Virus record (IMG/VR): IMGVR_UViG_3300009177_000028
Location: 62,001-126,000 of that record
Length of the DNA: 64,000 bases
Reading direction: 5' to 3' (one strand)
The position numbers and the translations under genes are program-made. Below are positions 44,891 to 59,445 of the stretch, one piece after another (the first letter of the stretch is position 1; each line of letters opens with the position of its first letter). The notes below the pieces were generated by a model. It made no database searches, was not told where the DNA came from, and saw nothing but the letters and a program-made list of their open reading frames with translations.

Positions 44891-45214
44891 TTATCGATCT
44901 ATCCAGCTTGCAACTAGTGTAATATTCTCTAAGCTATGTCCACTGGGAGGATCAAACAATGGTGCACCCATCGAGTGCCAGACCTCATATCGTTGAGTGC
45001 TTGTATTATAGCCTTGCATTTTATAATAATAATTAAACCCAGTTGTAATATGTATAGTTGTATTTAGGTCTGCTACTGAAGTAAACGGTATGCTGTCATT
45101 GGCTACAAGAAAATCAGTTACATCTTGCTCGCCCCATGAACTGCTGGCCTGGCCAGTATAACCTGCAAAGTGTATTGAGTTAAGTATTGTAGTTTGATCG
45201 GTTATTGTAGACAT
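44891..45214 (-). CDS. Small virion-type protein, class C (YYKxxGY motif)
   Basis: YYYKMQGYNTSTQRYEVW...SLENITLVASW is paralogous to the C-terminus of 48948-49517. Confidence 0.7.
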   Translation of the reverse strand: MSTITDQTTILNSIHFAGYTGQASSSWGEQDVTDFLVANDSIPFTSVADLNTTIHITTGFNYYYKMQGYNTSTQRYEVWHSMGAPLFDPPSGHSLENITLVASWIDR

Positions 45215-45221
45215 TATAGCC

Positions 45222-47651
45222 TTATGGTGTTAGACCGCTAGCGCCGTTCCACTGCAAATATATTCCGTTTTGTAAATGGATAAAACGTGGACAACCATTA
45301 TCTATTCCAGTAGTAACGGCACCACCGGTTGACATAACGCCGGTACCGCTTGTACATCCTGTAAATTGGGTTGCATTAGTGCCAGTATAGTTTACTAAAG
45401 AAACTCCGGTACTGGTAGTTACATAAATAGAACCGCTAGTAGGAAAGCCCGTAGTAGAAACAACGTTGATCGTTGCTTGCGGAAGTGTTGCTCCGTTAGA
45501 ACCAGATGCAATTGTTGTTGCTCCAACAAAAACTCCATTGCCCGTAGAGCCATTTAAAGTGAAAGTGGTGCTATTAATGACAGTAATAACCCAGGTTCCA
45601 TTAGCGGCGGTATTACCTAGTACCCCAGAAATAGTTACTACCTGACCAGTAACTAAAGCATTAGCTACGCCGGTAGTTATTTGAATGGGAGAAGCATTGG
45701 TTGCAGCGGTAATGGTACGTGTAGTAACTTCTTCTGTGCTTAAAGTAAAGGTACCAAAATTAGTTCTACCATTTCTTGTAATAGGAGCGAGGCCCATGAA
45801 TCTTTGATTATATGCAAATGGTGGATTAGAACCGGCTGTTAATGCAATTTCTGTAGCGATCCCTCCCCATATTTCTACCGGTAATATTTCGGTTGTTCCA
45901 GTAAATGGAGAATCTCCAGCATTAGCAGATAATAATGGATTAGTCGCTGAAGTTCCATCTAAATTAGCCCAACTACTTAAAGCACAAAAATCTGGTATTC
46001 CATTTTTAAAGGTAAACCCTACATTATTTGTTACTCCAGTTCTTAATATAATTGCGCCGAAATCGGTGTTTGGGGCGCCTGCGTAGCAGAATAATCTCTC
46101 TACATTTAAAGTTGGTAGTGGTGTTGGTTCACTATCTGGAAGTCCAAACATAATAAATCCATTATTAGTGCCGCCTAATGTTCTGGTGTATACGACAACA
46201 TACTGTCCAGACGATTCTGCTGCCATCGTAATACGACTGGCAGTAGTAGGGTGACCTCCACCTGTAATTAGGTTGCCGTAAGCGGTAGTTACTAAAGGAT
46301 CAATATCAAAAAACAAAGCTACATGATTGTGCGACCCACCGACTATAAAATCTCCATAACCATCAGCATTAAATCCTGTTGTAATAGAAACTAGTGGTAA
46401 AGATGAAATTGTTGGTTCAACAGCTAATCTAACTTGCCAGCCAATTGAGTGTGGACTTTGAAGAGTAATCCTGCTAACCTGAGTGACGCTGTCACCTGGA
46501 TACCCAGAAATTCTAACGCTACCGCCACCACCATATGTACCATTTCCGGTAGACCCGTTTAGTGCAAACGTGCTAGCAGTAAGTGGAGTCACGGTCCAAA
46601 CACCATTAGCTGCTGTGTTGCCAGTAATTCCAGAAATGACAACTTTTTGACCAACAGAGTAAGATGGATTTGGAGTAATTACAATTGGGCTAGCATTAGT
46701 TGCACCAGTAATTGTAAAAGAGTTATTCACAAAAGTTGACATAAAATTGGAGGCGGTTGTTTCAATTTCATACAACCACCAATTAATTGAATTGATAGTT
46801 TCAACTGGAGGGTTTTCGGTTGATCGGTAATCAAGAACATATCTATTTAGATTGCTAACTGCTCCACCTGTGGACATAGTTCCAGACCCGCCAGAGCACC
46901 CTGTAAATTGAGTAGCGTTAGTATTAGTGTAAGTAACTGCAAATGAGCCGGTGCTAGTTGTTACGAAGATAGTTCCACTGGTTGGGAAACCAGTAGTAGA
47001 TACTACGTTGATGGTAGATTGTGGCAAAGATTGACCGTTAGATCCTGAAGCGATAGTAGTGTTATTACCAACGTTAATAGCTGTAATTTTAAAGCAACCA
47101 GAATTTTTTGTTGGAAATGAAGTACTTTTCATCACAAACATTTTGCCAACGTCACCTGCAACAACTTTTCTTTTCTGTATTGGAATAGAAACTTCTTTTT
47201 CTACACCCGCTCCAAAATTGATACCAGTACCATATCCATCTGTAGTTAATCCAGATGTATAGAACATTCCTGTGCTTACCGTACCGCCAGTAGTAAAAGC
47301 TCCATTGCCAGCAGATCCTGATAGTGTGAATGTGTTGGCGCCAGTTACGTCAATTACCCAAGTTCCGTTTGCGGCTGTATTTCCGCCTACGCTTGCAAGA
47401 AAAACTGACTGCCTATTAGCTAAACCATGGGCCGTAGAGGTTGTAATTTGAATTGGCGTAGTATTACTAGCGGCAGTAACGGTTAAAGAATTTGCTACTG
47501 TATCTAGATTCCATCCCATGCTACCTACGATGGAATACCCTAGGACCCTGTACAAAAAGATAGACAATTCATACAAGAGTGGCGTATGGAATTTGCTGGT
47601 AGCATATCCGGTATTCGCTGCATTGTAATCTCTTGAAACAAATATTGTCAT
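45222..47651 (-). CDS. Virion-type scaffold protein class B3 with five plug-in modules
   Basis: B scaffold (RDY, SIFL.RVL, DVGK..V.KS...NSG.F, VLDYR, RITLQSPHS.GWQVR, GDSPFT..TE.LP, GRTNFG, HLQNGIY..W.G) with 3 module Y and 2 module X. Confidence 0.72.
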   Translation of the reverse strand: MTIFVSRDYNAANTGYATSKFHTPLLYELSIFLYRVLGYSIVGSMGWNLDTVANSLTVTAASNTTPIQITTSTAHGLANRQSVFLASVGGNTAANGTWVIDVTGANTFTLSGSAGNGAFTTGGTVSTGMFYTSGLTTDGYGTGINFGAGVEKEVSIPIQKRKVVAGDVGKMFVMKSTSFPTKNSGCFKITAINVGNNTTIASGSNGQSLPQSTINVVSTTGFPTSGTIFVTTSTGSFAVTYTNTNATQFTGCSGGSGTMSTGGAVSNLNRYVLDYRSTENPPVETINSINWWLYEIETTASNFMSTFVNNSFTITGATNASPIVITPNPSYSVGQKVVISGITGNTAANGVWTVTPLTASTFALNGSTGNGTYGGGGSVRISGYPGDSVTQVSRITLQSPHSIGWQVRLAVEPTISSLPLVSITTGFNADGYGDFIVGGSHNHVALFFDIDPLVTTAYGNLITGGGHPTTASRITMAAESSGQYVVVYTRTLGGTNNGFIMFGLPDSEPTPLPTLNVERLFCYAGAPNTDFGAIILRTGVTNNVGFTFKNGIPDFCALSSWANLDGTSATNPLLSANAGDSPFTGTTEILPVEIWGGIATEIALTAGSNPPFAYNQRFMGLAPITRNGRTNFGTFTLSTEEVTTRTITAATNASPIQITTGVANALVTGQVVTISGVLGNTAANGTWVITVINSTTFTLNGSTGNGVFVGATTIASGSNGATLPQATINVVSTTGFPTSGSIYVTTSTGVSLVNYTGTNATQFTGCTSGTGVMSTGGAVTTGIDNGCPRFIHLQNGIYLQWNGASGLTP

Positions 47652-48938
47652 TTAGGTGCCTAAAGGTAGAAGATTGTACGGCATTATAGATCCATCCCAG
47701 GGCCATAATACACCGTTACCTACGTGTATAAATTCTCCATTATCACCCACTAAATGAAAGTTGGGAACGTTGGTGCTCGTGAATGCTATTCTAGTTAATT
47801 TGGCTCTAGCTAAAGAGTATTGGCCAGCGGTAGAAATTGAAGATATTAATGCGTCTGAATAAATTATTTTACCGGTTCTAATTTGTGTTCCTAAAAGACC
47901 TGATAAATTTGGACCAACAGTGTACAGCGTCCCGGTAACACCATCTCCAACGAAATTTTTAGTCATTAATTGGCAAGTTCTAGTGGTCCCATCGAACCCG
48001 GCCATAGCAAAACTAGTGCTATGAGAGTCGGTACCTACAGCGGCTGTTAAATTATTACCGCCAACCATCATGGTTAGTGGGTTCGTATCTTGCGCTTGAG
48101 TATAGAACCTTTGAGGAACAAGCACATAGAAATATAGCCCTGCTGCTGCGTTAGAATTTGGAGATCTAATGTGTCCTAGAAGAAAATCAGTATCACCTAT
48201 TAGCGTGATATTGCCTATATTTCCCGCAGTGGTTCCAGTGAAATTGACTGTTGAGGCGGTAACTCTTTCAGTGATGGTGGTACCTGTAAAGGCGCTGCCA
48301 GTCCAAGTGCCCGGTGGAGATCCAACTACCCCAAACTGTCCGAATGGAGTGGAAGAGCCTCTTAGCAACATTTGAAATTGACTGCTGGCTTGGCCCGTGT
48401 TGACGCCAGAGGCGCCCGATAAAGTTCCTACCCAATAATTACCGCTAGCAATGCCTAACTGAGAAGCTGCGACGACATCTATTACTCTATAGTTGAGAGC
48501 TGAACGAGAAGTTAAATTATTTTTAAGTGTAGTAATATCTCTTGTCCCGCCACTAAATACGGATAGTTGTAATTGAGTTTGTGTTGGCACCCCGATAATT
48601 CTATAAATAGAATTATCTGTGCTATCTGGATCAGTGGTAGACCAAATAGTGATGTGCTTACCAATCATTGTTGAGTTAAAGTTGGCGGATGGAGAATTAA
48701 AATTAATTCCAAGATCCGAAGTTACCCCATCACTGCCTGTTGCCAATACCGAAGCACCTTCAAAAAAACCGGCTGGCGCGCTAGTTGGTGTGGCGGGCAT
48801 TCCACCTGGAGTGGTTAGAGAGGATGTTCCATTTATACAATATCCCCAGAACTCATAACAAATTCTTAGGAAGATAGGAATGTCCCTTCCATTAGTTCCT
48901 GTAATATACTGTAATGCTCTTAGATATTTTCTAGCCAT
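47652..48938 (-). CDS. Virion-type scaffold protein class A3 (no plug-in modules)
   Basis: A scaffold: YEFWGYCINGT, INYRV.D, NTGQASSQ, GQYSLAR.KL, GEFIH.GNG..WPWDG. Confidence 0.72.
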   Translation of the reverse strand: MARKYLRALQYITGTNGRDIPIFLRICYEFWGYCINGTSSLTTPGGMPATPTSAPAGFFEGASVLATGSDGVTSDLGINFNSPSANFNSTMIGKHITIWSTTDPDSTDNSIYRIIGVPTQTQLQLSVFSGGTRDITTLKNNLTSRSALNYRVIDVVAASQLGIASGNYWVGTLSGASGVNTGQASSQFQMLLRGSSTPFGQFGVVGSPPGTWTGSAFTGTTITERVTASTVNFTGTTAGNIGNITLIGDTDFLLGHIRSPNSNAAAGLYFYVLVPQRFYTQAQDTNPLTMMVGGNNLTAAVGTDSHSTSFAMAGFDGTTRTCQLMTKNFVGDGVTGTLYTVGPNLSGLLGTQIRTGKIIYSDALISSISTAGQYSLARAKLTRIAFTSTNVPNFHLVGDNGEFIHVGNGVLWPWDGSIMPYNLLPLGT

Positions 48939-48947
48939 ATTATTCCT

Positions 48948-49517
48948 TTATTGAATCCATCGCCCTACAATAGTTATATTGTCTAATGAATTGGTGCTTG
49001 GGGCGGTCTTATATACATCATTTTCCACATTTGGCGGATTACGATTAGGATCAAATAACTCTGGTCGACCAGTAATATTCTCAACAATAACCCAAGTTTC
49101 ATATTGTTGTGTTGATGTATTATATCCTCTAAGTTTGTAATAGATCCTTTGATCTTTTGGATGATCAATAACGGAATCAATGTCTACATCTTCTTCTGAA
49201 CGATTTTCAAGAAGTTGAATGCCTGCAAAATTAGTTGTGTATCCTGCATATGGTGAATTAACAAAGCTAGCAACAACAATGAAAGAGTTTTCAGTGGCGG
49301 CAAAATTAGTTGTGTATCCTGCATACGGAGAGTTATTAAAAAATGCAAGTGTACTTTGCATATCAAAACCTCCCCAATTAAGAAAATTTCCTTGGAAACG
49401 CCCATCTGTAAAATGTAAATTAACAACAGTAGTGTACCCATCCCACTTCGCTACAGATCCGAAATCGGGCGTATCCAACATTATTTGTGTTGCTGATAAA
49501 ATTTGACCTACTGCCAT
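48948..49517 (-). CDS. Small virion-type protein, class C, with internal 25-aa duplication
   Basis: NSPYAGYTTNFA twice; IYYKLRGYNTSTQQYETW...SLDNITIVGRW. Confidence 0.7.
   Translation of the reverse strand: MAVGQILSATQIMLDTPDFGSVAKWDGYTTVVNLHFTDGRFQGNFLNWGGFDMQSTLAFFNNSPYAGYTTNFAATENSFIVVASFVNSPYAGYTTNFAGIQLLENRSEEDVDIDSVIDHPKDQRIYYKLRGYNTSTQQYETWVIVENITGRPELFDPNRNPPNVENDVYKTAPSTNSLDNITIVGRWIQ
49225..49325. repeat. Perfect 26-nt direct repeat, 75-nt period
   Basis: GCAAAATTAGTTGTGTATCCTGCATA at 49225-49250 and 49300-49325. Confidence 0.9.
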
Positions 49518-49526
49518 TGATTATCC

Positions 49527-51806
49527 TTATGGTACTACCGCTGGCCCATTCCAAGGTATGTAGATTCCTCTTCTCATATGTTGAAAAGATGATCCTCTTA
49601 ATACTGTTCCGCCAGCGGTAAAAGCTCCATTTCCAGTCGTTCCATTTAATGTAAACTGAGTATTGTTAATCACTGTAACTACGAAAGTTCCATTGGCTGC
49701 CGTATTTCCACCAACTCCACTAATTGCCACCGTTTGACCGGTTACCAGCGTATTAGTAGCGGTAGTTGTGATTTGAATTGGAGAAACTCCATTTCCACTA
49801 GTAGTTGAAACGCTCCAGCTTGCCGAGTCAGTTGTCAATGTATAATCACCAAAATTAGTTCTTCCATTCTTGATGAATGGAAGCGTGCCCATTGCCTTAG
49901 GATAAAACGGATAGCTAATTGAGTTTGTAATATCGTGCCAAGTATTTACTACGCCAGCCACCAAATCGACTGGTAAAAGTTCGGTTGATGAAGTAAATGG
50001 AGAGTCTCCGGCCGAGCCATCAAACATTGGGCTAGCTCCCTGTACAACACCACTTAAATAAGTTAGAGAGGATGGAGAGCAAGAAATAGGTACCCACTTA
50101 AATGCCGCTCCCTGAATAGAGACAGTAACATAATGTCCAACAAACAAACTTACATCGTTAGTTCTTCCATTTCCTAAGTTGTTACTAGCCCCATTACCTA
50201 ATGCATATAGTCTTTCAACATTATCCAATGGGAGTGGCGCTGGCTCATTATCCGGAATTCCAAAGGTCAAATAAAATGATGGGGGAGAACCTGCATTCAG
50301 TGGCCTTCTGGCAAAAATATGAAAACTTTGTCCAGTGTCATCTCCAATTAGCGTCATTCTAAATTGTGGGCCTGCACCAGCATTATCACCACATCCCGTA
50401 GAAGTATTGAAGAGGGCGCTAGAAGTATCGTAATACAATGCGCCATGCAAATGTCGACCACCTACTGGAAAATCTCCGGCAGAGTTTCCAGCAAACCCAG
50501 GGGCGAATGTTATTAAAGCTGTGTTAAAATTGCTGTTAGAATCTGTAGCAGTTTCATTGCAAATTCTTACTTGGTACCCCGTAGAATGTGGGCTTTGTAA
50601 TATGATTCTTGGAGTAGTTGATGTTCCGTAACCACGATAACCAGTTCCACCGTTATTGGCGCCCTGTGTTGGACAATTAATATCTTTATCATAAAGATAC
50701 CATGGAACTGTATCAGTATTTTCTACTAGTGCTAAATCGCCATTTCCTCTATAATCTACTACAAATTTGTTTTGATTATAGATTGGCTCACCAGTAGCTA
50801 ATGTGCCGGTGCCACTGGAACAACCTGTAAATGCGATCTGAGTAACCGCTCCACCAGTAGACATAGTTCCTGTTCCACCGGAACAACCAGTGAACTGCGT
50901 ACCACCAGACGTGCTGGTGTAAGTCACCGTTTGGGCACCTGCGCTCGTGGTAACTGTAATGGTTCCGCTGCCCAAGAATCCAGCAGTAGAGGCAACGTTA
51001 ATAGTGCCTTGTGGAAGAACTTGTCCGTTTGAACCGGCAGCAATAGTTGTGCTAGCATTCTGTGTTCCGGTATAGTTAATTGTTTGAATATTATTGCTTG
51101 AAAAAACCGTGCCACCAGTAAACATAGATCCGGCACCGCCTGTACACCCAGTGAATTGAGTACCAGCGTTTAATCCTGTATAAGTGATTGTTTGACTTCC
51201 TGTTGTTGACAATAAAATTATTGATCCTGAATTTGGGAACCCCGTGGTAGAGGCTACGTTAATGGTGCCAGTTGGTAGCGCTACGCCATTGGAGCCAGAT
51301 GCAACGGTGGTGTTAGGTCCAGCAAAAAAACTTCCGCTGGCTGGAAATCCAGAAACTGAAGCTGCATAAATGGTTGCCGTAGGTAAAGATACAGCATTCG
51401 AGCCCGCTGCTACGGTTGTAGTATTACCTTGCTGCAATGCGGTAATTAAAAACAATCCAGAGTTTCTATAAGGATAAAGGGGGCTTTTAAGAACTAAAAT
51501 TCTGCCGATATCAGCAGAGATAACCCCTCTAACAGAAACTGGTATTGAAACTTCAATTGCAGCGCCGTTGTTAGCAATACCGGCTTTATTACCTACTGGG
51601 AAAGTTGGAGTATTAGCCGTGGGTGTAGTGTCGCCTGTTGCAAATAATAATTGTCCAACAGCGTTTATGTTATAATTAGTATCTCCAACATATGTGAAAC
51701 TCAAAATTCTTCTTAAGAAAATAGATGACACATAGGAATTAATCCATGGCCTATTTCCTGTAGTTACGTTTTGTGTGAGATAATCTCGGCAAAGATGAAC
51801 AACCAT
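49527..51806 (-). CDS. Virion-type scaffold protein class B2 with three nested module X and one module Y
   Basis: B scaffold closely paralogous to 53400-54851 (VGDTNYNIN, RI.LQSPHSTG.QVRIC, GDDTGQ, NEPAPLP, QGASPMFD, QH.RRG.YIPW.GP). Confidence 0.72.
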   Translation of the reverse strand: MVVHLCRDYLTQNVTTGNRPWINSYVSSIFLRRILSFTYVGDTNYNINAVGQLLFATGDTTPTANTPTFPVGNKAGIANNGAAIEVSIPVSVRGVISADIGRILVLKSPLYPYRNSGLFLITALQQGNTTTVAAGSNAVSLPTATIYAASVSGFPASGSFFAGPNTTVASGSNGVALPTGTINVASTTGFPNSGSIILLSTTGSQTITYTGLNAGTQFTGCTGGAGSMFTGGTVFSSNNIQTINYTGTQNASTTIAAGSNGQVLPQGTINVASTAGFLGSGTITVTTSAGAQTVTYTSTSGGTQFTGCSGGTGTMSTGGAVTQIAFTGCSSGTGTLATGEPIYNQNKFVVDYRGNGDLALVENTDTVPWYLYDKDINCPTQGANNGGTGYRGYGTSTTPRIILQSPHSTGYQVRICNETATDSNSNFNTALITFAPGFAGNSAGDFPVGGRHLHGALYYDTSSALFNTSTGCGDNAGAGPQFRMTLIGDDTGQSFHIFARRPLNAGSPPSFYLTFGIPDNEPAPLPLDNVERLYALGNGASNNLGNGRTNDVSLFVGHYVTVSIQGAAFKWVPISCSPSSLTYLSGVVQGASPMFDGSAGDSPFTSSTELLPVDLVAGVVNTWHDITNSISYPFYPKAMGTLPFIKNGRTNFGDYTLTTDSASWSVSTTSGNGVSPIQITTTATNTLVTGQTVAISGVGGNTAANGTFVVTVINNTQFTLNGTTGNGAFTAGGTVLRGSSFQHMRRGIYIPWNGPAVVP

Positions 51807-53145
51807 ATTAAAACCTTTAGAATGGAAACAGTGTGTACGGTAAAACGGTTTTATCCCAAGGTAATGCAGCTCCCTGAGATATTAATATAAAGTCTCCGTT
51901 TGAACTAAACCTAGTAAATTGTGGCATAAACACGTTAGCAAATCTTGCATTTCTCAATCTCACTCTAGCTAGTGAATATTGGCCGACAACTCCTGGCAGG
52001 GTTAAGAATCCTGGTGAATTAAGTAGATTTCCAGTGAACGGATTGGCCCCAGCCCTAAAATCACTTAAAGAATTGCCTGGAGGATTAGCTATATTGGGAA
52101 CAGTAGAACTAGCATTTCCATCTCCAATTAATGCTTTCACTGACGTTCTATATCCTCTAGCAACACCATCCGCTGCCTTCATTACAAATCCACCACCGTA
52201 TCCGGTACTAGTACTTGTTGTAGTAAATTGGGGAGAGACGTTGCCTCCTTGTATTTCTATTGCAATTGGATTAAGATCTTGAGATTGAGCATATAACCTA
52301 TCAGGTATTTCCATGTGGATATGAAATCCGCTACCATTAGGATTTCCAGTATCTTTGCTGTGGCATATTATATAGCTTCTATCGCCCCACATATTAATGG
52401 ACATAGTTCCGCTCGACCCGCCTGCGTTTGTTAAAGCTGGTCCCGTTACAACTCCTGTGCCATCAGTGAATGCTGAGCCGTTCCAGGTCCCACCAGGAGA
52501 AATATTGTAATTCCATCTACCTGTTGGGATACCACCACCCTGATCATTCATAATAATTTGTATTTGAGAGGTGGCTTGACCAGCATTTATACCCGTTGGA
52601 TCAAACTGGAAAACAAGATAGTTACCATTATTTGTTGCTCCTGATGTTTTACCAGCATCTCCCATATCAACTACTCTATAGTTAATTGATGATCTAGAAG
52701 TAAATGATGGTTTATATCCATCTGGTGGGCTCGGGGTACCACCATTATTTACATTAATAACAATATTATTAGTTGACTTAAAAGCTATTATATTATAAAT
52801 CGAATCTTCTGTACTATTAGATCCAGGTTTCCAAGTTACTAGTTGTTTACCAACCATATTAGAGGTAAATGGAATAGTAGAAGCCGAAAAGAAATCACTA
52901 TAACCGTCAGTTCTAAATATTGTTGTTGGATTAGTATATCCATCAGAGCCCATTGCATTGATTCTGTTACTAGTTACGTTGTTTCCAGTAGACATGGTAC
53001 CCGTTCCACCAGTACATCCAGTAAATTGGGTGCCAGCATTTAAACCAGTATAAGCAACGGTCTGCGTTCCAGTGCTCGTATATACGAAAATGGTTCCGCT
53101 GGTTGGAAAGTTAGTAGTAGAGGCAACGTTAATAGTGCCTTGTGG
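50985..53145. repeat. Identical 30-nt segment shared by module X copies in two genes
   Basis: AGTAGAGGCAACGTTAATAGTGCCTTGTGG at 50985-51014 and 53116-53145. Confidence 0.85.
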
Positions 53146-53385
53146 TAAAGAGACTCCGTTTGAACCTGCCGCAATAGTAGTTGCTATTCCAGTAAAATTT
53201 GCCGGAAAATTAGATGGTGTAGTAGAGGCGAACCCACCTGGAGTGTTAAGTGATGAAGTTCCATTACAGCAGAATCCAAAAAACTCATACATAAATTTAA
53301 AAGCAAAGACCGGCCCGGCCCCGGAATTGCCTCCGCCAACAATGCCGCCCGTAAATATAAGACCTCTTACAAATTTATTTGCCAT
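51817..53385 (-). CDS. Virion-type scaffold protein class A2 with one module X
   Basis: YEFFGFCCNGT, VGK.LV.WKP.SNS.EDSIY, INYRVVDM, GQYSLARVRL, GDFI.I.QG..LPWD. Confidence 0.72.
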   Translation of the reverse strand: MANKFVRGLIFTGGIVGGGNSGAGPVFAFKFMYEFFGFCCNGTSSLNTPGGFASTTPSNFPANFTGIATTIAAGSNGVSLPQGTINVASTTNFPTSGTIFVYTSTGTQTVAYTGLNAGTQFTGCTGGTGTMSTGNNVTSNRINAMGSDGYTNPTTIFRTDGYSDFFSASTIPFTSNMVGKQLVTWKPGSNSTEDSIYNIIAFKSTNNIVINVNNGGTPSPPDGYKPSFTSRSSINYRVVDMGDAGKTSGATNNGNYLVFQFDPTGINAGQATSQIQIIMNDQGGGIPTGRWNYNISPGGTWNGSAFTDGTGVVTGPALTNAGGSSGTMSINMWGDRSYIICHSKDTGNPNGSGFHIHMEIPDRLYAQSQDLNPIAIEIQGGNVSPQFTTTSTSTGYGGGFVMKAADGVARGYRTSVKALIGDGNASSTVPNIANPPGNSLSDFRAGANPFTGNLLNSPGFLTLPGVVGQYSLARVRLRNARFANVFMPQFTRFSSNGDFILISQGAALPWDKTVLPYTLFPF

Positions 53386-53399
53386 TCACTTCTCCAAAA

Positions 53400-54851
53400 T
53401 TATGGTATGATATTAGGCCCAGCCCAAGGGATATACAAGCCTCTTCTTAAATGCTGATAAGCTCTTCCATTTTCTGTAGTCGGAGAAAAATCTCCAAAGT
53501 TAGTTCTCCCTGAGCGGAGATGTGGAATAGTTCCCATTGGTCTTGGTGAATAAGGATACACTTGAACAGTTTGGTTTCCATATGATGAAAGAGTTCCTTG
53601 TACCAAGTCTATTGGTAATAATTCTGTTGCATTGGTAAATGGGGAGTCCCCTCCGTTGCTGTCAAACATCGGACTTGCTCCTTGCGCAACTCCCGTTACA
53701 TAGGTCCAAAAAGAGGCTGCAAGTTGAACTGGGACACCGAAAGTTGTCGCACTCATTCCTTGGGCGGCGCCTCGTGATAAGAAGAAGCTATTAGCTGGGG
53801 AACCTAACATTTGAAATAAAGCCCCATCATTAACTGATCTACTACCGAAACCATCGTCTCCAGTAAAACCTGAACCTAACACAAATAATCTGGCTACAGT
53901 GTTAACTGGTAATGGCGCTGGCTCATTTTCAGCCAATCCAAAAGTTACAATATTAGAGTCTGGTTGGGTTGCATTACCGGGACGCCTACCATATACGGTA
54001 ACCCCTTGTCCAGTGTCATCTCCTACCATGGTTATTCTAAATTGAACTCCAGAAGTTCCTCCGTCCCCAAATCCAGGAGCACCTCCGAGATAAATTGTAC
54101 TACTACTATTAAACCACATTGGAGCATGGAAGTGTTGTCCGAATGCCGGAAAATCTCCTGCGGCTGTTCCACCAAATCCTGGAGCAACAGTCATACGAGG
54201 ACAATTTCTATTGCTAAGGTTACTGGCATAAGAGCCGCTTCCCTCATTACAAATTCTTACTTGCCATCCTGTAGAGTGTGGACTTTGAAGAACAATTCTT
54301 GGAGTATTAGAAGTAAGATCACTTAAATATTCAGCGCTTGTTTTAGTATTGCTACCACCGCTAGTTGGACAGTTTAGATCTTTTTCATATATGTACCAAG
54401 CAATACTATCGGCAGCTTCTACTGGAGGAGGATCTCCTAAAGTTCTATAATCAATAACATAAGAATTTGTACTAGTTTCAAATCCAAGAATCAAAAAAAT
54501 TCCTGAATTATAGCGTGGAAAAGCTGTACTTCTAAGTACCAATAATCTACCGATATCAGCAGAAGTTACTGTTCTTACAGATACAGGAATAGAAACATAA
54601 AATTCTTTTTGTGCTCCCAAGTTAATTCCAGCTTTGCTGCCCGTTGCAAAAGTAGGCGTTCCCGTGGGAGTAGAATCACCAGTCGCAATTAATAAAGTGC
54701 CTATAGAATTAATATTGTAGTTAGTATCACCAACATAAGAATATAACAACACTCTTCTTAGAAAGATACTTAACAAGTAAGTATAAATAAACTCTCTATT
54801 TGAGTTTGTAATATTTTGTGTTTGATAGTCTCTGAGTAAATGTATCGCCAT
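53400..54851 (-). CDS. Virion-type scaffold protein class B1 (no plug-in modules)
   Basis: Minimal B scaffold, 483 aa; aligns by eye with B2 and B3 across its length. Confidence 0.72.
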   Translation of the reverse strand: MAIHLLRDYQTQNITNSNREFIYTYLLSIFLRRVLLYSYVGDTNYNINSIGTLLIATGDSTPTGTPTFATGSKAGINLGAQKEFYVSIPVSVRTVTSADIGRLLVLRSTAFPRYNSGIFLILGFETSTNSYVIDYRTLGDPPPVEAADSIAWYIYEKDLNCPTSGGSNTKTSAEYLSDLTSNTPRIVLQSPHSTGWQVRICNEGSGSYASNLSNRNCPRMTVAPGFGGTAAGDFPAFGQHFHAPMWFNSSSTIYLGGAPGFGDGGTSGVQFRITMVGDDTGQGVTVYGRRPGNATQPDSNIVTFGLAENEPAPLPVNTVARLFVLGSGFTGDDGFGSRSVNDGALFQMLGSPANSFFLSRGAAQGMSATTFGVPVQLAASFWTYVTGVAQGASPMFDSNGGDSPFTNATELLPIDLVQGTLSSYGNQTVQVYPYSPRPMGTIPHLRSGRTNFGDFSPTTENGRAYQHLRRGLYIPWAGPNIIP

Positions 54852-54860
54852 ATTTCCTCG

Positions 54861-56411
54861 TTAGGCTCCGTAGAATAGAATTTGGTTTACATAAATGGTA
54901 TTATCCCAAGGCCAGCAAATTCCATTTTGTAATTGGATAAATTCTCCATTTAATCCGATTCTATGATTCTTTGGTACGTGTGTTCCGGTAAATTTTACTG
55001 TTCTTAATTTAACTCTAGCCAACTGATATTGATTTGTAACTCCGGGAAGACACAATAGTCCATCTGAAATCGGAATTGTACCAGCAGTTGTATTATAACC
55101 AATTTTATAATCAGTTAAGTTTTGTCCGAAAACGTCAGGGGTACCATCACCTCTTAAAGCTTTAACTAAAGTTCTATAAGATCTTGCTGTCGTGGAGTCT
55201 CCAGAATGGGTGCGCATGACAAATCCACCACCATAGCTTGCAGTAGTGCTTGAAGTATATACGCTGCCAGTGTTAAATGTGTGACCCATAAAAGCTACGG
55301 GATGAAGATCTGCTCCTTGAGGATATAATCTTGTTGGAATTTCAAAGTGAAAACTGCTGTGTAAATTAGCTTGAAACAAATCTTGCTCTCTAATATGAGC
55401 AATTAGAAATGTTTTATCTCCAATCATAGTTACCGCAGTTTGTCCACTAGTATATGCTTGACTGGTATTTGGGTTATAACTAAACAGACATTGATAACCA
55501 TCATTCTGGAATCCGTTATAAACAGTTCCACTGTTTGCGGTATAAGTGCCGTTACCTGTAGAGCCAGTCAATGTAAATGTAGTAGATCCAGTTACAGTCA
55601 CGAGCCATTGGCCGTTAGCCGCAGTATTACCTAAAGCTCCAACAATATTAACGGTTTGAGCGGTTGTGAAGTTATGAGGTGAAGCTGTAGTGCATGCTAT
55701 CGGGGAGGCGTTGGTTGCAGCAGTAATTGTTAAAGGTACACCTGACCAAGAGCCGGTTCCTGAAATGCCGACTCCTAGGGTGGCGCTGGTGTTTGTGCCA
55801 AGATTAGCTATTTGAATCTGTGAATTTGCTTGTCCAGGGTTAATGCTTGGAGCATCAGTTTGCAGGATCATAAAATTTCCATTGCCAGCCGATGTTGCTA
55901 AGGCATCTGATCCCGTTTCCATATCTACAACCCTATAAACAACACCAGAACGTGCATTCATAGAAGGGTGTTTGGTAGTCGGGTTAGGAAACCCTCCAGT
56001 ATTGATATTAACAATAATTTGATTGCTAGAAACAACCCTACTAATTATATACATAGAGTCTTCAGAACTATTAGAATTTGGCACCCACATGACTAGCATT
56101 TTACCAGCCATAGTTGGGCTAAAAGGCGCTGATGAAGTAGTGGTAAATAAGCAATCTCCGCTAACTAAATCTCCGCTGACTGCAACATGTGATCCATCAG
56201 TGCCTGAAGCCATTAAACTGGTTCCACCAGTAAAATTGGTAGGAAGAACGGTGCCGTTATTAGATGCAAATCCGCCAGGAATTGTTGGGGAAGCGGTTCC
56301 GTTAATACAAAACCCCCAAAATTCATACGTCCATTTCATTCTCCAAGCAACACCTCTGCCTCCGGCGTTTGCGTTGGGATAGACCATTCCTCGAATAAAT
56401 TTCATACCCAT
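54861..56411 (-). CDS. Virion-type scaffold protein class A1 with one module Y
   Basis: YEFWGFCINGT, YRVVDM, INPGQANSQ, NQYQLARVKL, GEFIQLQNG.CWPWD. Confidence 0.72.
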   Translation of the reverse strand: MGMKFIRGMVYPNANAGGRGVAWRMKWTYEFWGFCINGTASPTIPGGFASNNGTVLPTNFTGGTSLMASGTDGSHVAVSGDLVSGDCLFTTTSSAPFSPTMAGKMLVMWVPNSNSSEDSMYIISRVVSSNQIIVNINTGGFPNPTTKHPSMNARSGVVYRVVDMETGSDALATSAGNGNFMILQTDAPSINPGQANSQIQIANLGTNTSATLGVGISGTGSWSGVPLTITAATNASPIACTTASPHNFTTAQTVNIVGALGNTAANGQWLVTVTGSTTFTLTGSTGNGTYTANSGTVYNGFQNDGYQCLFSYNPNTSQAYTSGQTAVTMIGDKTFLIAHIREQDLFQANLHSSFHFEIPTRLYPQGADLHPVAFMGHTFNTGSVYTSSTTASYGGGFVMRTHSGDSTTARSYRTLVKALRGDGTPDVFGQNLTDYKIGYNTTAGTIPISDGLLCLPGVTNQYQLARVKLRTVKFTGTHVPKNHRIGLNGEFIQLQNGICWPWDNTIYVNQILFYGA

Positions 56412-56435
56412 TTAGATCTCCAAACTATTGCTTAA

Positions 56436-56456: not shown

Positions 56457-57965
56457 TTACGAGTACCAAGTATCTAAAACTTCTGGAATAGAATATGGGC
56501 CGCCGCATGGGAAAGCTGGCGCATTTGCTAATGAAATTTGCGTATCTACCCAAACAACAGCCTGCGGAGGATCGCATGAAGTATCATACGCTCTTAATTT
56601 ATAATATTGGGTTAAAGTGGATAAGTTTAGTGGTAGAGTGCCGGTTCGATAAATTGTTTTAAAATAGTCCAAAGATCTAACAACATTGGCAATTCTCAAA
56701 TCTTGCACACTAAAATTAGCTTCTTCTTTAGTTGGTGAAGAGGTAACTAAATAAAGCGGGGTAGCTCCGATTACCAAAGCGCCCGGATTTGCACTAGTTG
56801 CGGTAAAAATTAATCTTGTATTAGCTGCCGGAATAACAGTTGAGTTGCTAAAAACTGTAGTTTTTCCGCCAGCAGCGCTTTGAATGCCGATTGAAACTGT
56901 GTTACTTGATGTTGATGTAGTATATAAGGTTTCAAATGTAGTTGACCCTTCAAAAAATTTAATTTCTGCATTAAGGGTGCCACCGGCCAATGAATTCATA
57001 CGCCATTCAATTACAAAAGTTCTGTTGGGGGAAGATCCCACTGTTGTGGTAAAAATTCCCAAACCAGTTCCGCTAGTGGTTGTGTCTCTTTCACAAACGT
57101 TAATGGTTGCCCCAAGTGAGGAGTTTGGTAAGCTAAAATTAAATGCATTTGTAGCTTGTCCGAATTCCACGAACCCATTTGATGAAGCATTAACAGAAGT
57201 ATATGTTATTCCCCATACGGTTACTGGAAATGGTAAAGCAACAGTAGTCATTACTTCATCGCCATGGTTTCCAATATCTGTTACACCAGAAACATAAGTT
57301 CCAGTAGAAGATGTAATGGCGTAACTAACGTCATTATAAAGTACATAAGGCCCCGGCATAGTCGTGCTTTGTAACTGGGCGGCACCGTTGTAAGTTAATA
57401 GTAAACATCCATTTAGATAAGATCTCATGGCGGTCCCATCATGCGTAAACCCTATGTGACACCATTGATGTAATGGAATCGGGAAATCGGTAACTGTTTT
57501 ACTTGTTTGTGCAGTTGGTGAGGTAGCACATCCAAAATAAACATCTTGCCCGCTGTTACCAGAACCATTAGAGACTTCCCAAGAAAAGAATGGGGCAGCC
57601 CATGTATTTGTTGTTGTGTGCTGTCTAAATAGTTTTTTAACGAATTGTTGAAAATTACTATTATTAAGATAGCTTCGTAAATTAACCCAAAATGAAATAG
57701 TAAATGGTGGTTGTGTATTTATATTTTCTGCACCAAAAATATAGTTTCTGGTGGCCGAAGCGCCAGAAGGATAGTTACCAGCTCCAGGGAAATATGGGCA
57801 GTTACCACCAAATACCCCCGTGCCTGTTCTGATTATTGTACCACTAACAGATAGATCCGTAGACGCACTTCCGGCTAATATACTTCCGGTGTTTTTGTAA
57901 ACTCCAGAGGTCTCATCTAGAAGCCATACGTAGCCATCATTTGTATCGGGTGGTATTCTTGCCAT
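56457..57965 (-). CDS. LamG-domain virion-type protein with inserted NIDO-like domain and class C tail
   Basis: FTISFWVNL...WCHIGFTHDG..MRSYLNG...VQDLRIANVVR. Insert ALPFPVTVWGITY.SV.ASSNG...GSSPNRTFVIEW. Tail YYKLRAYD. Confidence 0.7.
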   Translation of the reverse strand: MARIPPDTNDGYVWLLDETSGVYKNTGSILAGSASTDLSVSGTIIRTGTGVFGGNCPYFPGAGNYPSGASATRNYIFGAENINTQPPFTISFWVNLRSYLNNSNFQQFVKKLFRQHTTTNTWAAPFFSWEVSNGSGNSGQDVYFGCATSPTAQTSKTVTDFPIPLHQWCHIGFTHDGTAMRSYLNGCLLLTYNGAAQLQSTTMPGPYVLYNDVSYAITSSTGTYVSGVTDIGNHGDEVMTTVALPFPVTVWGITYTSVNASSNGFVEFGQATNAFNFSLPNSSLGATINVCERDTTTSGTGLGIFTTTVGSSPNRTFVIEWRMNSLAGGTLNAEIKFFEGSTTFETLYTTSTSSNTVSIGIQSAAGGKTTVFSNSTVIPAANTRLIFTATSANPGALVIGATPLYLVTSSPTKEEANFSVQDLRIANVVRSLDYFKTIYRTGTLPLNLSTLTQYYKLRAYDTSCDPPQAVVWVDTQISLANAPAFPCGGPYSIPEVLDTWYS

Positions 57966-57975
57966 ATATTTTTAG

Positions 57976-59439
57976 TTAGGTTACGCTAACTACTCCCATT
58001 TGAATAAATTGTCCATCGTATGGTTGAACAGGATTGGTTATTCCTGATATACTGTAAGGCGGATTAGCGCCAGAGTTTCTAATTTCTACGCTATCAATAG
58101 ATAAAGCGGTTAGCGTAATAGTTGCGCCCCCATTCATTTGAATAATTTTAGTATAATCTATCGGGTAAACTACAGTTTGTCCCGATGTTCCTCTATTAAG
58201 ATAAAAAGTTTGGGCCGGGCTGGACACGTCTAACTGATAAATATTCCAGTTATCAGCAGCCGGAGTGCCTCCTGTCTGGAAATATGCTCCATCATTAGTT
58301 CCACCAGTATAGGTTTTTTGTTCAATTACCCCTCTAAATCGTAACGTAACATTATATAGTGTCACGGTAGATCCTGGAAGAACAGTAGAAACGGTAGTAG
58401 AGGCGGTGGTAGAACAGGCCACACTATTAACATTTCCGGTGTTAGGTAATAACCAAGTTAATCCATTTAAAGCATCAGTAACAGTTGTTGGTGTACTATT
58501 TTGAAATCCTAGGACTCCCCATTTTTCTAATACTTCAATGGGGCCTAAAGTAGCAAGAGTGCCACAGGGTATAGTTGCTCCAGTATAATTAATGCCGGTA
58601 GAAACCCAATAAATTGGGGAGGGAGGCGAGCAAGCATTATCATAAGCTCTTAATTTATAATATGTGGTAAAAGGGATCCCAGATCCTGAAGTTGTCATTG
58701 CTTGTCTATAGATATTTTGAAAATATGACTGTGGACGAGCAACGTTGGCTATTCTGATATCACATATAGAGCTGGCGCACTCTTCAGGGTTACCTGATCC
58801 GGATGGAATTGCTCCAAAAAACCATGGACCATGAGTACCGTAGTTAATAGCTCCGGTTGCCGCTGTTTGCCCAACCAAATTACCATTTAAATATCCATAT
58901 TGAAATGATCCATCATATACTAATCCTATATGACACCATTGATTTAGTGGAATATTATTATTTGCGTCTAACACCATTCCACCACCCGTCGCAGTTGCCG
59001 CAAACAAGTCGAAGGCGGTAGGCTGACTGGTATACTGTCTTGTTTGCAAACCTATTTGTCCAAATACTGAGGACCAGTTTCCGGCTGTATGTTGTTTGGT
59101 AAATGGGTGTTGTGTAAAACCCGTAGTATTATAGTTTCTAAGATAATACCAAAAAGAGAAAGTAACAGGAGATTGCGGCTCAACGTTATTGGCGCCAGAA
59201 ATAAAATTGCGCGGAGAGCCGCTATTATTTGCTGTAAATGTGACGCAGGTGTTTGCACCCATAGATGAGAACGGGCTTGGTTGCTGAAAATTTGCTATTC
59301 CTGAGAATGTAGCTAAATCAGAAACTGCATGTGAAATAGCAGATGGAGATGTAGACGAATTAATAAATGGGGCTGCCGTCTCATCTAGTTTCCATACTAC
59401 AATATCATTATTATCAGGATCAACTCTAATACCTGTCAT
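57976..59439 (-). CDS. LamG-domain virion-type protein with class C motif and extra C-terminal domain
   Basis: VTFSFWYYL...WCHIGLVYDG...YLNG...CDIRIANVARP..YF, then YYKLRAYDN. Confidence 0.7.
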   Translation of the reverse strand: MTGIRVDPDNNDIVVWKLDETAAPFINSSTSPSAISHAVSDLATFSGIANFQQPSPFSSMGANTCVTFTANNSGSPRNFISGANNVEPQSPVTFSFWYYLRNYNTTGFTQHPFTKQHTAGNWSSVFGQIGLQTRQYTSQPTAFDLFAATATGGGMVLDANNNIPLNQWCHIGLVYDGSFQYGYLNGNLVGQTAATGAINYGTHGPWFFGAIPSGSGNPEECASSICDIRIANVARPQSYFQNIYRQAMTTSGSGIPFTTYYKLRAYDNACSPPSPIYWVSTGINYTGATIPCGTLATLGPIEVLEKWGVLGFQNSTPTTVTDALNGLTWLLPNTGNVNSVACSTTASTTVSTVLPGSTVTLYNVTLRFRGVIEQKTYTGGTNDGAYFQTGGTPAADNWNIYQLDVSSPAQTFYLNRGTSGQTVVYPIDYTKIIQMNGGATITLTALSIDSVEIRNSGANPPYSISGITNPVQPYDGQFIQMGVVSVT

Positions 59440-59445
59440 TTGTCC

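What the first reader, a model, noticed from the sequence alone, without database searches (positions are those of the whole stretch)
44891..56411. Triplicated A/B gene-pair array with plug-in modules: a combinatorial virion-surface system
In transcription order the genes read A1-B1-A2-B2-C-A3-B3-C. The A and B scaffolds are each conserved across three copies and share distant motifs (GK/R..V....NS..Y/F.I and a terminal H/Q...G...PW.G). Two ~65-aa modules are inserted at equivalent loops in variable number. Module X (TTIA.GSNG..LP..TINV.ST..FP.SG...YT....QFTGC.GG.G.M.TG) has 6 copies; module Y (ITAATNASPI...H.....V.I....GNTAANG.W.VTV...TFTL.GSTGNG) has 5 copies here and 1 in 34161. The loop between GRTNFG and the terminal H carries nothing in B1, Y in B2 and Y+X in B3. 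The loop after NSG.F.I carries nothing, three X, or one X. A3 is bare, A2 has X and A1 has Y. X copies in different genes share 30 identical nt, suggesting recent exchange. Inference: A/B heteromeric appendages are diversified by domain shuffling, with no reverse transcriptase or invertase in the window.
Basis: partly seen in the sequence, partly recalled or inferred. Interest (0 to 1): 0.82.

Follow-up and report, generated by a model that had tools for sequence, protein, structure and literature searches.

The report
Six-gene phage arm with plug-in domains
A giant soil phage carries three pairs of related structural genes, probably building side arms on its tail, whose surface loops hold varying numbers of two small snap-in domains, one of them an undescribed, widespread domain that can sit inside copies of itself.

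Summary
The minus strand of 44891-56411 reads A1-B1-A2-B2-C1-A3-B3-C2. A, B and C are each paralogue families. There are six X modules and five Y modules, plus one Y in gene 34161, all at the stated loops.

New findings:
- A and B are homologous over their full length (hhalign 94%, E 1e-7).
- The three X in B2 are nested: one X is split by two complete X.
- Modules occupy a few fixed loops, three in A and four in B. One B2 loop holds 0-4 X in close relatives.
- Distant relatives carry bare 3A+3B arrays.
- X has no Pfam or PDB match but occurs in 2,271 protein clusters, mostly outside A/B.
- Y is an E1_FCCH-type barrel, a known outward-facing phage tail decoration.
- Predicted folds point to one virion-protein superfamily (phrog_687). 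A3 matches a JBD30 baseplate chain, most likely gp47. B1 matches 0305phi8-36 gp158/gp159 and a baseplate-adjacent ACP17 protein. In JBD30, three gp47/gp48 heterodimers form each lateral tail arm.

Best reading: a tail or baseplate arm whose tiers are separately encoded and decorated by insertable domains.

"Recent exchange" and active shuffling are not supported. Module copies are saturated at synonymous sites and mostly inherited in place. Virion location and A:B pairing remain inferences.

The parts
54861..56411 (-). A1, 516 aa, A scaffold with one Y (DNA 55512-55736) inserted after the SP.G.W.G motif (A site 3)
53400..54851 (-). B1, 483 aa, bare B scaffold. AF2 model pLDDT 81, pTM 0.89
51817..53385 (-). 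A2, 522 aa, A scaffold with one X (DNA 52966-53187) inserted just before the conserved (A/M)xGSDG strand (A site 2)
49527..51806 (-). B2, 759 aa, B scaffold with a nested X array at the NSG.F.I hairpin (B site 2) and one Y (49593-49808) at the GRTNFG/QH hairpin (B site 4)
50772..51422 (-). Nested X array inside B2. The outer X is in three pieces (51312-51422, 51054-51098, 50772-50840), interrupted by two complete X (51099-51311 and 50841-51053)
   Evidence: the spliced outer pieces match the X profile end to end (positions 2-69, 68 bits, E 1.5e-22), and only in that order. Same pattern in relatives and in unrelated proteins
48948..49517 (-). C1, 189 aa, small protein after B2. Carries the YYKLRGYN motif shared with C2, U1 and U2, and an internal 75-nt tandem duplication
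47652..48938 (-). A3, 428 aa, bare A scaffold. AF2 model pLDDT 86, pTM 0.90. Best solved-structure match is JBD30 baseplate chain 8rk3_K
45222..47651 (-). B3, 809 aa, B scaffold with five modules: Y 47268-47486 (site 1), X 46854-47060 (site 2), Y 46515-46718 (site 3), Y 45507-45716 plus X 45309-45521 (site 4)
44891..45214 (-). C2, 107 aa, paralogue of the C-terminal half of C1. Last gene of the operon, abutting the convergent M23 peptidase gene
56457..60156 (-). U1 (56457-57965), U2 (57976-59439), U3 (59446-60156): three paralogous Laminin_G_3 / ConA-like lectin-fold proteins directly upstream, same strand, syntenic in nearly all relatives
60163..61407 (-). U4, 414 aa, first gene of the block. 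Its N-terminal ~65-115 aa domain recurs in gene 34161-38015 and in the divergent gene starting at 61540
34161..38015 (+). 1284-aa protein with a U4-type N-terminal domain, one Y (35370-35585) and weak, below-cutoff beta-propeller-type Pfam matches. The sixth Y of the window
61540..64000 (+). Divergent gene running off the window (at least 820 aa) with a U4-type N-terminus and a beta-roll domain. Fibre- or spike-like

Best explanation
The block U4-U3-U2-U1-A1-B1-A2-B2-C1-A3-B3-C2 is most likely one late operon. It would encode a peripheral host-adhesion structure on the tail or baseplate of a huge soil phage. The source contig is 204 kb; relatives reach 490-498 kb.

Shown:
- A and B are ancient paralogues of one fold.
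- Arrays of three A plus three B genes, always with A next to B, recur in two deeply diverged clades.
- In the window's clade a few fixed surface loops, three in A and four in B, have acquired small domains.
- Y is an E1_FCCH-type beta-barrel. X is a roughly 70-aa domain with no Pfam or PDB match. X can sit in a scaffold loop, in tandem, or inside loops of another X.
- The number of modules per loop changes between related phages by gain or loss of whole modules.

Inferred:
- A and B are very divergent members of the virion-protein superfamily of JBD30 gp47/gp48 and 0305phi8-36 gp158-160 (phrog_687).
- As in JBD30, where three gp47/gp48 heterodimers stack into each lateral tail arm, A and B form 1:1 heterodimers. 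The three pairs would form three successive tiers of an arm. Here each tier has its own genes and so can be decorated differently.
- X and Y project outward as low-affinity binding or spacing modules that tune reach and avidity for the host surface. The lectin-fold U proteins and the small C proteins dock on the same structure through the shared YYKLR(A/G)Y(D/N) element.

Diversification is evolutionary, through indels of insertable domains. It is not programmed.
For: - Paralogy and tight packing.
- A-B homology: (94%, E 1.4e-7, 383 columns).
- Confident models: (pTM 0.89 and 0.90).
- Fold matches: A3 to JBD30 baseplate chain 8rk3_K, prob 0.99, E 0.017, TM 0.34/0.45. B1 to ACP17 387-aa protein E 2e-7, 0305phi8-36 gp159 E 2e-4, gp158 E 1e-2, MMDA13 'putative structural protein' and phage G gp371.
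- JBD30 gp47 and gp48, and 0305phi8-36 gp158/159/160, all match phrog_687 over their full length. The two independent fold leads therefore converge.
- gp158-160 are three tandem paralogues, detected in virions by mass spectrometry, next to the baseplate genes.
- The ACP17 gene lies directly upstream of the gp25/gp6 wedge genes.
- JBD30 arms are three gp47/gp48 heterodimers with similar folds (PMC11445458). The same is inferred for phage Lydia (PMC11946847).
- 3A+3B arrays in distant bare relatives.
- Fixed insertion sites and variable occupancy.
- The FCCH domain is an outward-facing tail decoration (PMC13576161).
- Some X-bearing proteins elsewhere carry tail-fibre PHROGs or YadA_stalk.
- Neighbours are fibre-like: lectin-fold proteins, a beta-roll protein, a shared N-terminal domain.
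- Atlas: A3 and B1 hit the same unnamed viral clusters of about 330-340 aa.
Against: - No sequence-level link to phrog_687. A and B hit no PHROG. Profile-profile comparisons with gp47/48/158-160 are not significant (E 0.013 and 0.6).
- The A3-JBD30 fold match is borderline (E 0.017, rmsd 8.6 A). B1 matches nothing in the PDB, although gp48 is there.
- Assigning chain K to gp47 rests on length (317 against 318 aa). Assigning A7KUT2/3 to gp158/159 rests on an accession range recalled from memory plus exact lengths and adjacency.
- The ~490 kb relatives have 2 A + 3 B, which does not fit three strict pairs.
- No tail tube, sheath, baseplate hub or capsid gene lies in the window. In distant relatives the array follows helicase and PhoH genes.
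- Nothing here shows that the proteins are in virions or that A binds B.
Confidence: 0.5

Rival explanations
1. A and B are virion proteins but not JBD30-like arms. They could be baseplate wedge or periphery subunits, tail-sheath or neck decorations, or capsid or head-fibre proteins. The 3+3 count would then reflect another symmetry requirement.
For: - The fold matches show family, not position. 0305phi8-36 gp158-160 and ACP17 are myoviruses in which these proteins have no assigned place.
- PHROGs files phrog_687 under 'head and packaging'.
- Atlas feature hits include head-fibre clusters, at low scores.
- The class II arrays have 2A+3B.
Against: - The only member with a solved position forms lateral tail arms.
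- Homologues in 0305phi8-36 and ACP17 sit in baseplate or fibre gene blocks.
- Neighbours here are lectin-fold and fibre-like proteins.
Confidence: 0.22
2. One reading: the array is an actively combinatorial system. Modules would be exchanged between genes frequently by recombination or gene conversion, generating within-population diversity.
For: - One 30-nt identical run, with 84% identity over 69 nt, between A2-X and the third B2-X.
- Module number differs even between relatives whose B1 proteins are 77-83% identical.
Against: - All other module pairs share at most 17 identical nt. Third-codon identity at conserved residues is 0.31-0.58.
- For six of ten modules the best match is the positional orthologue in another genome.
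- No long near-identical repeats, no inverted repeats, no RT or recombinase.
- The window locus is identical in the two collections, which hold the same contig, so nothing can be said about within-population variation.
Confidence: 0.07
3. The proteins are not virion parts. They would act inside the infected cell or on its surface, for example as a scaffold, superinfection-exclusion layer or secreted adhesin.
For: - There is no direct virion evidence.
- In distant relatives the array follows helicase and PhoH genes.
- The window mixes replication and other genes.
Against: - Fold relatives are experimentally shown virion proteins.
- No signal peptide-like or membrane-spanning segment is evident in the N-termini (read by eye).
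- X and Y occur in tail-fibre-type proteins and tail tube decorations.
Confidence: 0.08
4. X is not an autonomous globular domain. It would be a repeat unit, such as a propeller-blade-like or beta-solenoid element, and the 'nested' pieces would be parts of one larger repeat structure.
For: - The N-terminal half of X (positions 3-37) weakly resembles NHL-derived 'Pizza' propeller blades. Summed E is 5e-6, but each repeat scores only about 10 bits.
- Partial X hits are common.
Against: - Single isolated X copies occur in scaffold loops, in A2, in B3 and in the L014 B2.
- Partial pieces come in complementary pairs that flank a complete copy. Spliced in order they restore a full-length match; in the wrong order they do not.
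- Break points cluster at three positions.
Confidence: 0.13

Closest known systems
Pseudomonas phage JBD30 tail-fibre (arm) proteins gp47/gp48 (PDB 8rk3; phrog_687); inferred also for phage Lydia gp67/gp68
   Same: - Two adjacent genes encode proteins of similar fold.
- Three heterodimers per arm matches the three A/B pairs here.
- The A3 model's best solved-structure match is a 317-residue chain of this baseplate, most likely gp47.
   Different: - JBD30 uses one gene pair three times. Here, and in distant relatives, there are three diverged pairs.
- A and B are 430-480 aa bare, against 307-318 aa.
- No detectable sequence similarity.
- JBD30 proteins carry no inserted X or Y modules.
- JBD30 is a 37-kb siphophage; this is a huge phage.
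Bacillus phage 0305phi8-36 gp158/gp159/gp160 (phrog_9130 and phrog_687); also Bacillus phage G gp371 and the Acidovorax phage ACP17 387-aa protein
   Same: - Fold matches of the B1 model.
- Tandem paralogues.
- Virion proteins by mass spectrometry, encoded beside baseplate and fibre genes (ACP17).
- Large or jumbo myoviruses.
   Different: - Three paralogues of one type rather than 3A+3B.
- 267-293 aa, no inserted modules, position in the virion unknown.
- No sequence-level similarity.
E1_FCCH (PF16190) beta-barrel used as outward decoration of siphovirus tail tube proteins (gp39/gp13; PMC13576161)
   Same: - Y matches PF16190. B3 scores 45.1 bits and gene 34161 scores 33 bits, against a cut-off of 29.5.
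- Small six-stranded barrel exposed on phage tails.
- In E1 enzymes the FCCH is itself an inserted domain (my own knowledge of Uba1 structures), so the fold tolerates insertion.
   Different: - Here Y is inserted into loops of another scaffold, up to three per protein and next to X, rather than fused at a terminus of a tube protein.
- The A1 and B2 copies fall below the Pfam cut-off on their own.
Ig-like, FN3 and BACON-type accessory domains of phage structural proteins
   Same: Small, dispensable-looking beta domains. They are present or absent between close relatives and are thought to give weak surface adhesion (general knowledge, not tested here).
   Different: - X has no match to these families or to any Pfam model.
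- X is inserted in loops and nests within itself.
- X is more conserved than its host scaffolds: 64-75% identity between clades whose scaffolds are about 45-55% identical.
Diversity-generating retroelements and invertible tail-fibre cassettes
   Same: All are ways of varying phage receptor-binding structures.
   Different: No RT, no template/variable repeat pair, no invertase and no inverted repeats. Variation here is the presence or absence of whole domains over evolutionary time.

Membership tests
phrog_687-type virion structural proteins (JBD30 gp47/gp48) | Significant match to the family HMM | tested here: not met
   No PHROG hit for any A or B at E<=0.01. gp47/gp48 score E 1e-101 and 5e-97, and gp158-160 score E 1e-6 to 1e-7, on the same model.
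phrog_687-type virion structural proteins (JBD30 gp47/gp48) | Profile-profile similarity to gp47/gp48/gp158-160 | tested here: not met
   hhalign E 0.013 (prob 3.4%) for A and 0.6 for B (also 45, 46, 57-59, 79, 80). The top A alignments in four of five comparisons fall on one region (IGD.DF.I.H ... P.RLY..DPNP), which is suggestive only.
phrog_687-type virion structural proteins (JBD30 gp47/gp48) | Same fold as a solved or predicted member | tested here: inconclusive
   A3 to 8rk3_K: prob 0.99, E 0.017, TM 0.34/0.45. B1 to gp159 E 2e-4 (TM 0.29/0.48) and gp158 E 1e-2. B1 has no PDB match. No direct superposition could be run.
phrog_687-type virion structural proteins (JBD30 gp47/gp48) | Adjacent paralogous genes | tested here: met
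   A next to B in every array. A-B homology 94%, E 1.4e-7.
phrog_687-type virion structural proteins (JBD30 gp47/gp48) | 1:1 heterodimer, three dimers stacked per lateral arm, located on the baseplate | not testable with these tools
   No multimer prediction was available and no virion data exist. The gene count of 3A+3B in most arrays is compatible; 2A+3B in class II is not.
Pfam E1_FCCH (PF16190), for module Y | Whole-protein score above the gathering cut-off of 29.5 bits | tested here: met
   B3 45.1 bits; gene 34161 33 bits. B2 (23.7) and A1 (16.7) are below the cut-off, but their Y copies are homologous to the B3 copies (jackhmmer E 1e-28 to 1e-37).
Diversity-generating retroelement or invertible cassette | Reverse transcriptase or invertase, plus near-identical template/variable or inverted repeats | tested here: not met
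   No such Pfam domain in any window ORF of 100 aa or more. Direct repeats are at most 85% identical and there are no inverted repeats in 44000-62000.
Tail-fibre assembly chaperones, for C1/C2 | Match to a known chaperone family | tested here: not met
   No Pfam or PHROG hit. Instead C shares an 8-residue motif with the lectin-fold U1/U2 proteins.
NHL / beta-propeller repeat, for module X | Full-length match of the unit to a blade, and six or so blades closing a ring | tested here: not met
   Only X positions 3-37 align, at about 10 bits per designed 'Pizza' blade. Single X copies occur alone in loops.

The most novel reading that the evidence does not exclude
This is a previously unrecognised architecture for phage host recognition. 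The JBD30-type arm of three stacked heterodimers would be 'unrolled' into six separately encoded paralogous subunits. Each subunit is a loop-display scaffold. Insertable domains (Y and the new, self-nesting X) are added as single, tandem or branched Russian-doll arrays, giving tier-specific, tunable avidity. X would be a large undescribed domain family (2,271 clusters) whose adjacent termini make it a general plug-in element of phage fibres.
Probability: 0.3. Interest if true: 0.75.

Novelty: new variant of a known kind. Interest (0 to 1): 0.6.

Why it matters
- It gives a structural lead (JBD30-type heterodimer arms) for gene families that are unannotated in the libraries searched here. These families are conserved in huge soil phages that have no cultured member.
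- It suggests how one repeated dimer can evolve into position-specific subunits.
- It defines X, a widespread phage domain with no Pfam model and no structure. X's tolerance of insertion, even into itself, makes it a natural example of recursive domain insertion and a candidate scaffold for loop display.
- The 0-4 copy variation at a single loop between close relatives gives a tractable system to test whether accessory-domain number tunes adsorption.
- None of this changes basic concepts of phage biology, and the key steps (virion location, A:B pairing, ligand) are still inferred.

Tried and rejected
- GenBank phage searches with the DNA and with the B1 and A3 proteins found nothing.
- PDB sequence searches with B1, A3 and B3 found nothing meaningful.
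- PHROGs gave no hit for any A, B or C.
- Narrow A-versus-B profiles gave only a 41-column, 6.5% match. This was superseded by broad profiles.
- hhalign of A and B against JBD30 and 0305phi8-36 proteins, singly or as a profile, was not significant. HMM and BLAST tests against the ACP17 neighbours also failed.
- B1 against the PDB by fold gave nothing.
- A GTDB genome scan for hosts or prophages found no relative.
- Flanking genes in distant relatives gave only helicase, PIN-PhoH and unknowns, with no BLAST link to the large window proteins.
- The U4 N-terminus against a tail-fibre N-terminus (phrog_8469-bearing P0258) showed no similarity.
- C against U beyond the 8-residue motif was not significant (iE 0.11).
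- The promoter and terminator scan was not above chance.
- The Atlas search with X alone returned only unnamed viral clusters.
- A literature search for nested domain insertion in tail fibres found no paper.
- DGR or invertase mechanisms were rejected.
- Recent module exchange as the main process was rejected.

Full report
**1. The observation**

The minus strand of 44891-56411 holds eight tightly packed ORFs with gaps of 0-14 nt: A1 516 aa, B1 483, A2 522, B2 759, C1 189, A3 428, B3 809 and C2 107.

All-against-all BLASTP confirms three paralogue families:
- A1/A2/A3: 29-31% identity, E 1e-52 to 1e-59.
- B1/B2/B3: E 1e-38 to 1e-105.
- C1/C2: E 2e-12.

An iterated profile search over all six-frame ORFs of the window finds X only in A2, B2 and B3. 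It finds Y only in A1, B2, B3 (three copies) and gene 34161-38015.

**2. Nested X**

The 'three X' of B2 are not tandem. One X is cut into three pieces (aa 129-165, 237-251, 323-345). Two complete X (166-236 and 252-322) sit in the gaps.

Spliced in order, the three pieces match the X profile from position 2 to 69 at 68 bits (E 1.5e-22). In swapped order they match only as fragments.

The same signature, an N-part, a full copy and a complementary C-part, fills the relatives. It also occurs in 14 of 145 unrelated X-bearing proteins. Break points cluster near profile positions 24, 30-40 and 50-52.

**3. A and B are one family; insertion sites are fixed**

Profiles built only from close relatives barely touch: 41 columns, 6.5%. 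Profiles that include distant relatives (alignments A5 and A6) align over 383 columns, almost end to end, at 94% probability and E 1.4e-7.

I aligned every A and B from a dozen loci to the scaffold HMMs.
- Insertions of 30 aa or more fall at three places in A:
  - after the N-terminal helix;
  - just before the (A/M)xGSDG strand;
  - after SP.G.W.G.
- They fall at four places in B:
  - just before ATG.KAGIN;
  - the hairpin after NSG.F.I;
  - the long loop before RI.LQSPH;
  - the hairpin between GRTNFG and QH.RRG.

In the A-B alignment, the second A site and the first B site are the same position. In the AF2 models, the sites I could map by their flanking motifs (B sites 1-4, A site 2) lie between secondary-structure elements. 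I did not verify this at residue level for every site.

The same site can hold nothing, Y, X or an X array. The B site after NSG.F.I is empty in B1 here and holds Y in the B1 of the ~490 kb phages. It holds X arrays in B2.

**4. Relatives**

The window comes from a 204,387-bp viral contig (IMGVR_UViG_3300009177_000028 = Ga0105248_10000031).

B1 and A3 each have more than 100 homologues in metagenomes, all labelled 'hypothetical'. Host contigs reach 490-498 kb. None is in GenBank phages or in GTDB genomes.

Three layouts exist:
- **Class I**, the window and close kin: U4, three U, then A-B-A-B-C-A-B-C.
- **Class II**, the ~490 kb phages: U4, three U, then A (1255-1341 aa, carrying 3 Y and several complete plus many partial, nested X in one loop)-B-C-B-A-B-C.
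- **A distant clade** (29-36% identity): completely bare scaffolds with no X, Y, C or U, as A-B-A-B-A-B or A-B-B-A-A-B.

Trees show that class II lacks A2 and B2 orthologues and has a duplicated B1 (support 0.97-1.0). They also show that the three A of the window's clade group together against the distant clade (0.995). The triplication was therefore either independent in the two clades or homogenised. B is unresolved.

The recurrence of three A plus three B, each A beside a B, is the strongest hint of a fixed stoichiometry.

**5. Module turnover**

Occupancy differs even among close relatives.
- The B2 hairpin after NSG.F.I holds a different number of X:

| X copies | Loci |
|---|---|
| 0 | L054 (B1 83% identical) |
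| 1 | L014 |
| 2 | L016, L053 |
| 3 | window, L003 |
| 4 | L011, L015 |

- A3 is bare here but has Y+X in L003 and L015.
- A2 is bare in L016 and has two X in L053.

Yet the copies are old. Nucleotide identity between copies is 55-69%. Third-position identity at conserved residues is 0.31-0.58. The single 30-nt identical run (A2-X against the third B2-X) is the only long one.

For six of the ten window modules the best match is the copy at the same site in another genome (74-89%). That exceeds any copy in the same genome. The other four (two X, two Y) show no clear positional orthologue.

The process is therefore occasional gain and loss of whole modules, with at most rare short conversion tracts. 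It is not ongoing shuffling. No RT, recombinase, template repeats or inverted repeats are present.

**6. What the modules are**

Y matches Pfam E1_FCCH above threshold in B3 and in gene 34161. A recent paper shows this barrel as an outward-facing decoration of siphovirus tail tubes (PMC13576161).

X has no Pfam hit and no PDB relative apart from a weak blade-like resemblance of its first half. An exhaustive profile search finds it in 2,271 representative clusters, 999 of them at E<=1e-10. A single protein can show up to 15 matched X stretches, counting partial pieces.
- 134 of the top 145 have no A or B scaffold.
- A few carry tail-fibre PHROGs or YadA_stalk.
- The consensus of 294 copies keeps a single Cys in FTGC in 90%.
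- X is more conserved than its hosts. It is 64-75% identical between class I and II, where scaffolds are about 45-55% identical. This argues for a constrained function rather than a variable binding face.

**7. What the scaffolds are**

AF2 gives confident models: B1 pTM 0.89, A3 pTM 0.90.

A3's only meaningful PDB match is chain K of the JBD30 baseplate: prob 0.99, E 0.017, 296 columns. At 317 residues it fits gp47 (318 aa) and no other baseplate protein.

B1 has no PDB match. In BFVD it matches:
- an ACP17 protein, E 2e-7;
- A7KUT3 (E 2e-4) and A7KUT2 (E 1e-2);
- a Sphingomonas phage 'putative structural protein';
- phage G gp371.

I take the A7KU accessions to be Bacillus phage 0305phi8-36 entries, an accession range I recall from memory. 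By exact length and adjacency, A7KUT2 and A7KUT3 then correspond to its gp158 and gp159. These are virion proteins by mass spectrometry, encoded just after the baseplate hub, gpV and gpJ genes.

The ACP17 protein (CDS 33321-34484) lies just upstream of the gp25/gp6 wedge genes.

The two leads meet. JBD30 gp47 and gp48, and 0305phi8-36 gp158, gp159 and gp160, all match phrog_687 over their full length. gp158-160 are three tandem paralogues.

The JBD30 paper shows that gp47 and gp48 have similar folds and form heterodimers. Three heterodimers build each lateral arm that grips the type IV pilus (PMC11445458).

Sequence-level tests of this link all fail. Membership is therefore not shown; only a fold-level resemblance is.

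**8. Context**

Upstream on the same strand are three paralogous lectin-fold (Laminin_G_3) proteins and U4. The N-terminal domain of U4 recurs in the 1284-aa Y-bearing protein at 34161 and in the divergent beta-roll protein at 61540. Sharing an N-terminal anchor in this way is what one would expect of several fibres attaching to one structure; that pattern comes from my general knowledge, not from a test here.

C1, C2, U1 and U2 share the motif YYK[LM][RQ][AG]Y[DN]. It occurs nowhere else in the six-frame ORFs and is kept in relatives. I read C as a small docking or capping subunit rather than a chaperone; this is a weak inference.

Elsewhere the window encodes a PhuZ-like tubulin, helicases, RNR and PhoH, which fits a jumbo phage. 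It has no capsid, tube or sheath gene.

**9. Verdict**

- It is plausible about a virion-surface heteromer.
- It is wrong about recent or active exchange.

The system is best filed as a strongly elaborated variant of the heterodimeric tail-arm proteins known from JBD30, decorated by a known barrel (Y) and by an undescribed, self-nesting domain (X).

What is shown:
- paralogy;
- A-B homology;
- fixed insertion sites;
- nesting of X;
- variable occupancy;
- the distribution of X.

What is inferred:
- virion location;
- A:B pairing;
- three-tier arms;
- an adhesive role for the modules.

Noticed in passing
window 14927-16288 (+): A 453-aa protein matches the phage tubulin PhuZ family (phrog_4733, E 1e-7). 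This fits a jumbo phage that may organise its replication compartment with a tubulin spindle.
   Followed up: no
window 9453-14903 (+) and 41561-42541 (+): A run of glycosyltransferases (phrog_2170, GtrB-like, Glycos_transf_2) and a nucleotide-sugar epimerase lies in the same window as very Thr/Ser/Asn/Gly-rich X and Y modules. Whether virion proteins are glycosylated is open.
   Followed up: no
window 49215-49340 (-), inside C1: A 51-nt unit is repeated at 75-nt spacing (82% identical). It duplicates the peptide NSPYAGYTTNFA within C1.
   Followed up: no
window C1, C2, U1, U2; relatives L001-L026: The motif YYK[LM][RQ][AG]Y[DN] occurs exactly four times in the six-frame ORFs, only in these four proteins. 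It is conserved in C and U proteins of related loci, so it may be a shared docking element.
   Followed up: partly
L001, L006, L007, L021, L026 (class II, ~490 kb phages): The first A gene is 1255-1341 aa. A single loop carries 740-820 aa of X and Y, including several levels of X-in-X nesting. These arrays have 2 A and 3 B (A2/B2 lost, B1 duplicated), which the three-pair model does not explain.
   Followed up: partly
L053 7541-8426: In a close relative (B1 77% identical) no gene was called where the three lectin-fold U genes between U4 and A1 would lie; only a 69-aa ORF and a gap remain. I did not scan that stretch with the U profile. If they are truly missing, the U trio is dispensable or replaceable.
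   Followed up: no
L015 1074-2621: The A1 orthologue is split into 373-aa and 120-aa ORFs. This is a frameshift or stop, or an assembly error.
   Followed up: no
L033 (0305phi8-36) 17676-20200: gp158, gp159 and gp160 are three tandem paralogues (E 1e-12 to 1e-17). They belong to the same PHROG superfamily as JBD30 gp47/gp48. I did not find this link stated in the 0305phi8-36 paper I read (PMC2147016).
   Followed up: partly
X profile positions 3-37: The first half of X resembles the blade of NHL-derived designed 'Pizza' propellers (AAGSN..LP....N......GT.YVT), at about 10 bits per blade. This is a lead to X's fold, or a coincidence of beta-hairpin sequence.
   Followed up: partly
X profile position 57 (FTGC): A single cysteine is conserved in 90% of 294 X copies from 139 diverse proteins. 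It could have a structural, metal-binding or covalent role.
   Followed up: no
window 60163-61407, 34161-34700, 61540-61740: One N-terminal domain of about 65-115 aa is shared by three otherwise different large proteins on both strands. In the 460-aa relatives of U4 part of it is duplicated internally.
   Followed up: partly
window 11293-12132, 22891-23532, 28425-29225: The window also encodes an Fpg/Nei-type DNA glycosylase, a sigma-70 region-2-like protein and an M24 metallopeptidase. These are unusual accessory genes for a phage.
   Followed up: no
L043-L047 (distant relatives): The bare A/B arrays sit directly after a helicase and a PIN-PhoH gene. They are followed by conserved unknown proteins of about 160, 340, 830 and 1340 aa. 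In the window PhoH (26478-27827) lies 17 kb away on the other strand, so the neighbourhood has been rearranged.
   Followed up: partly
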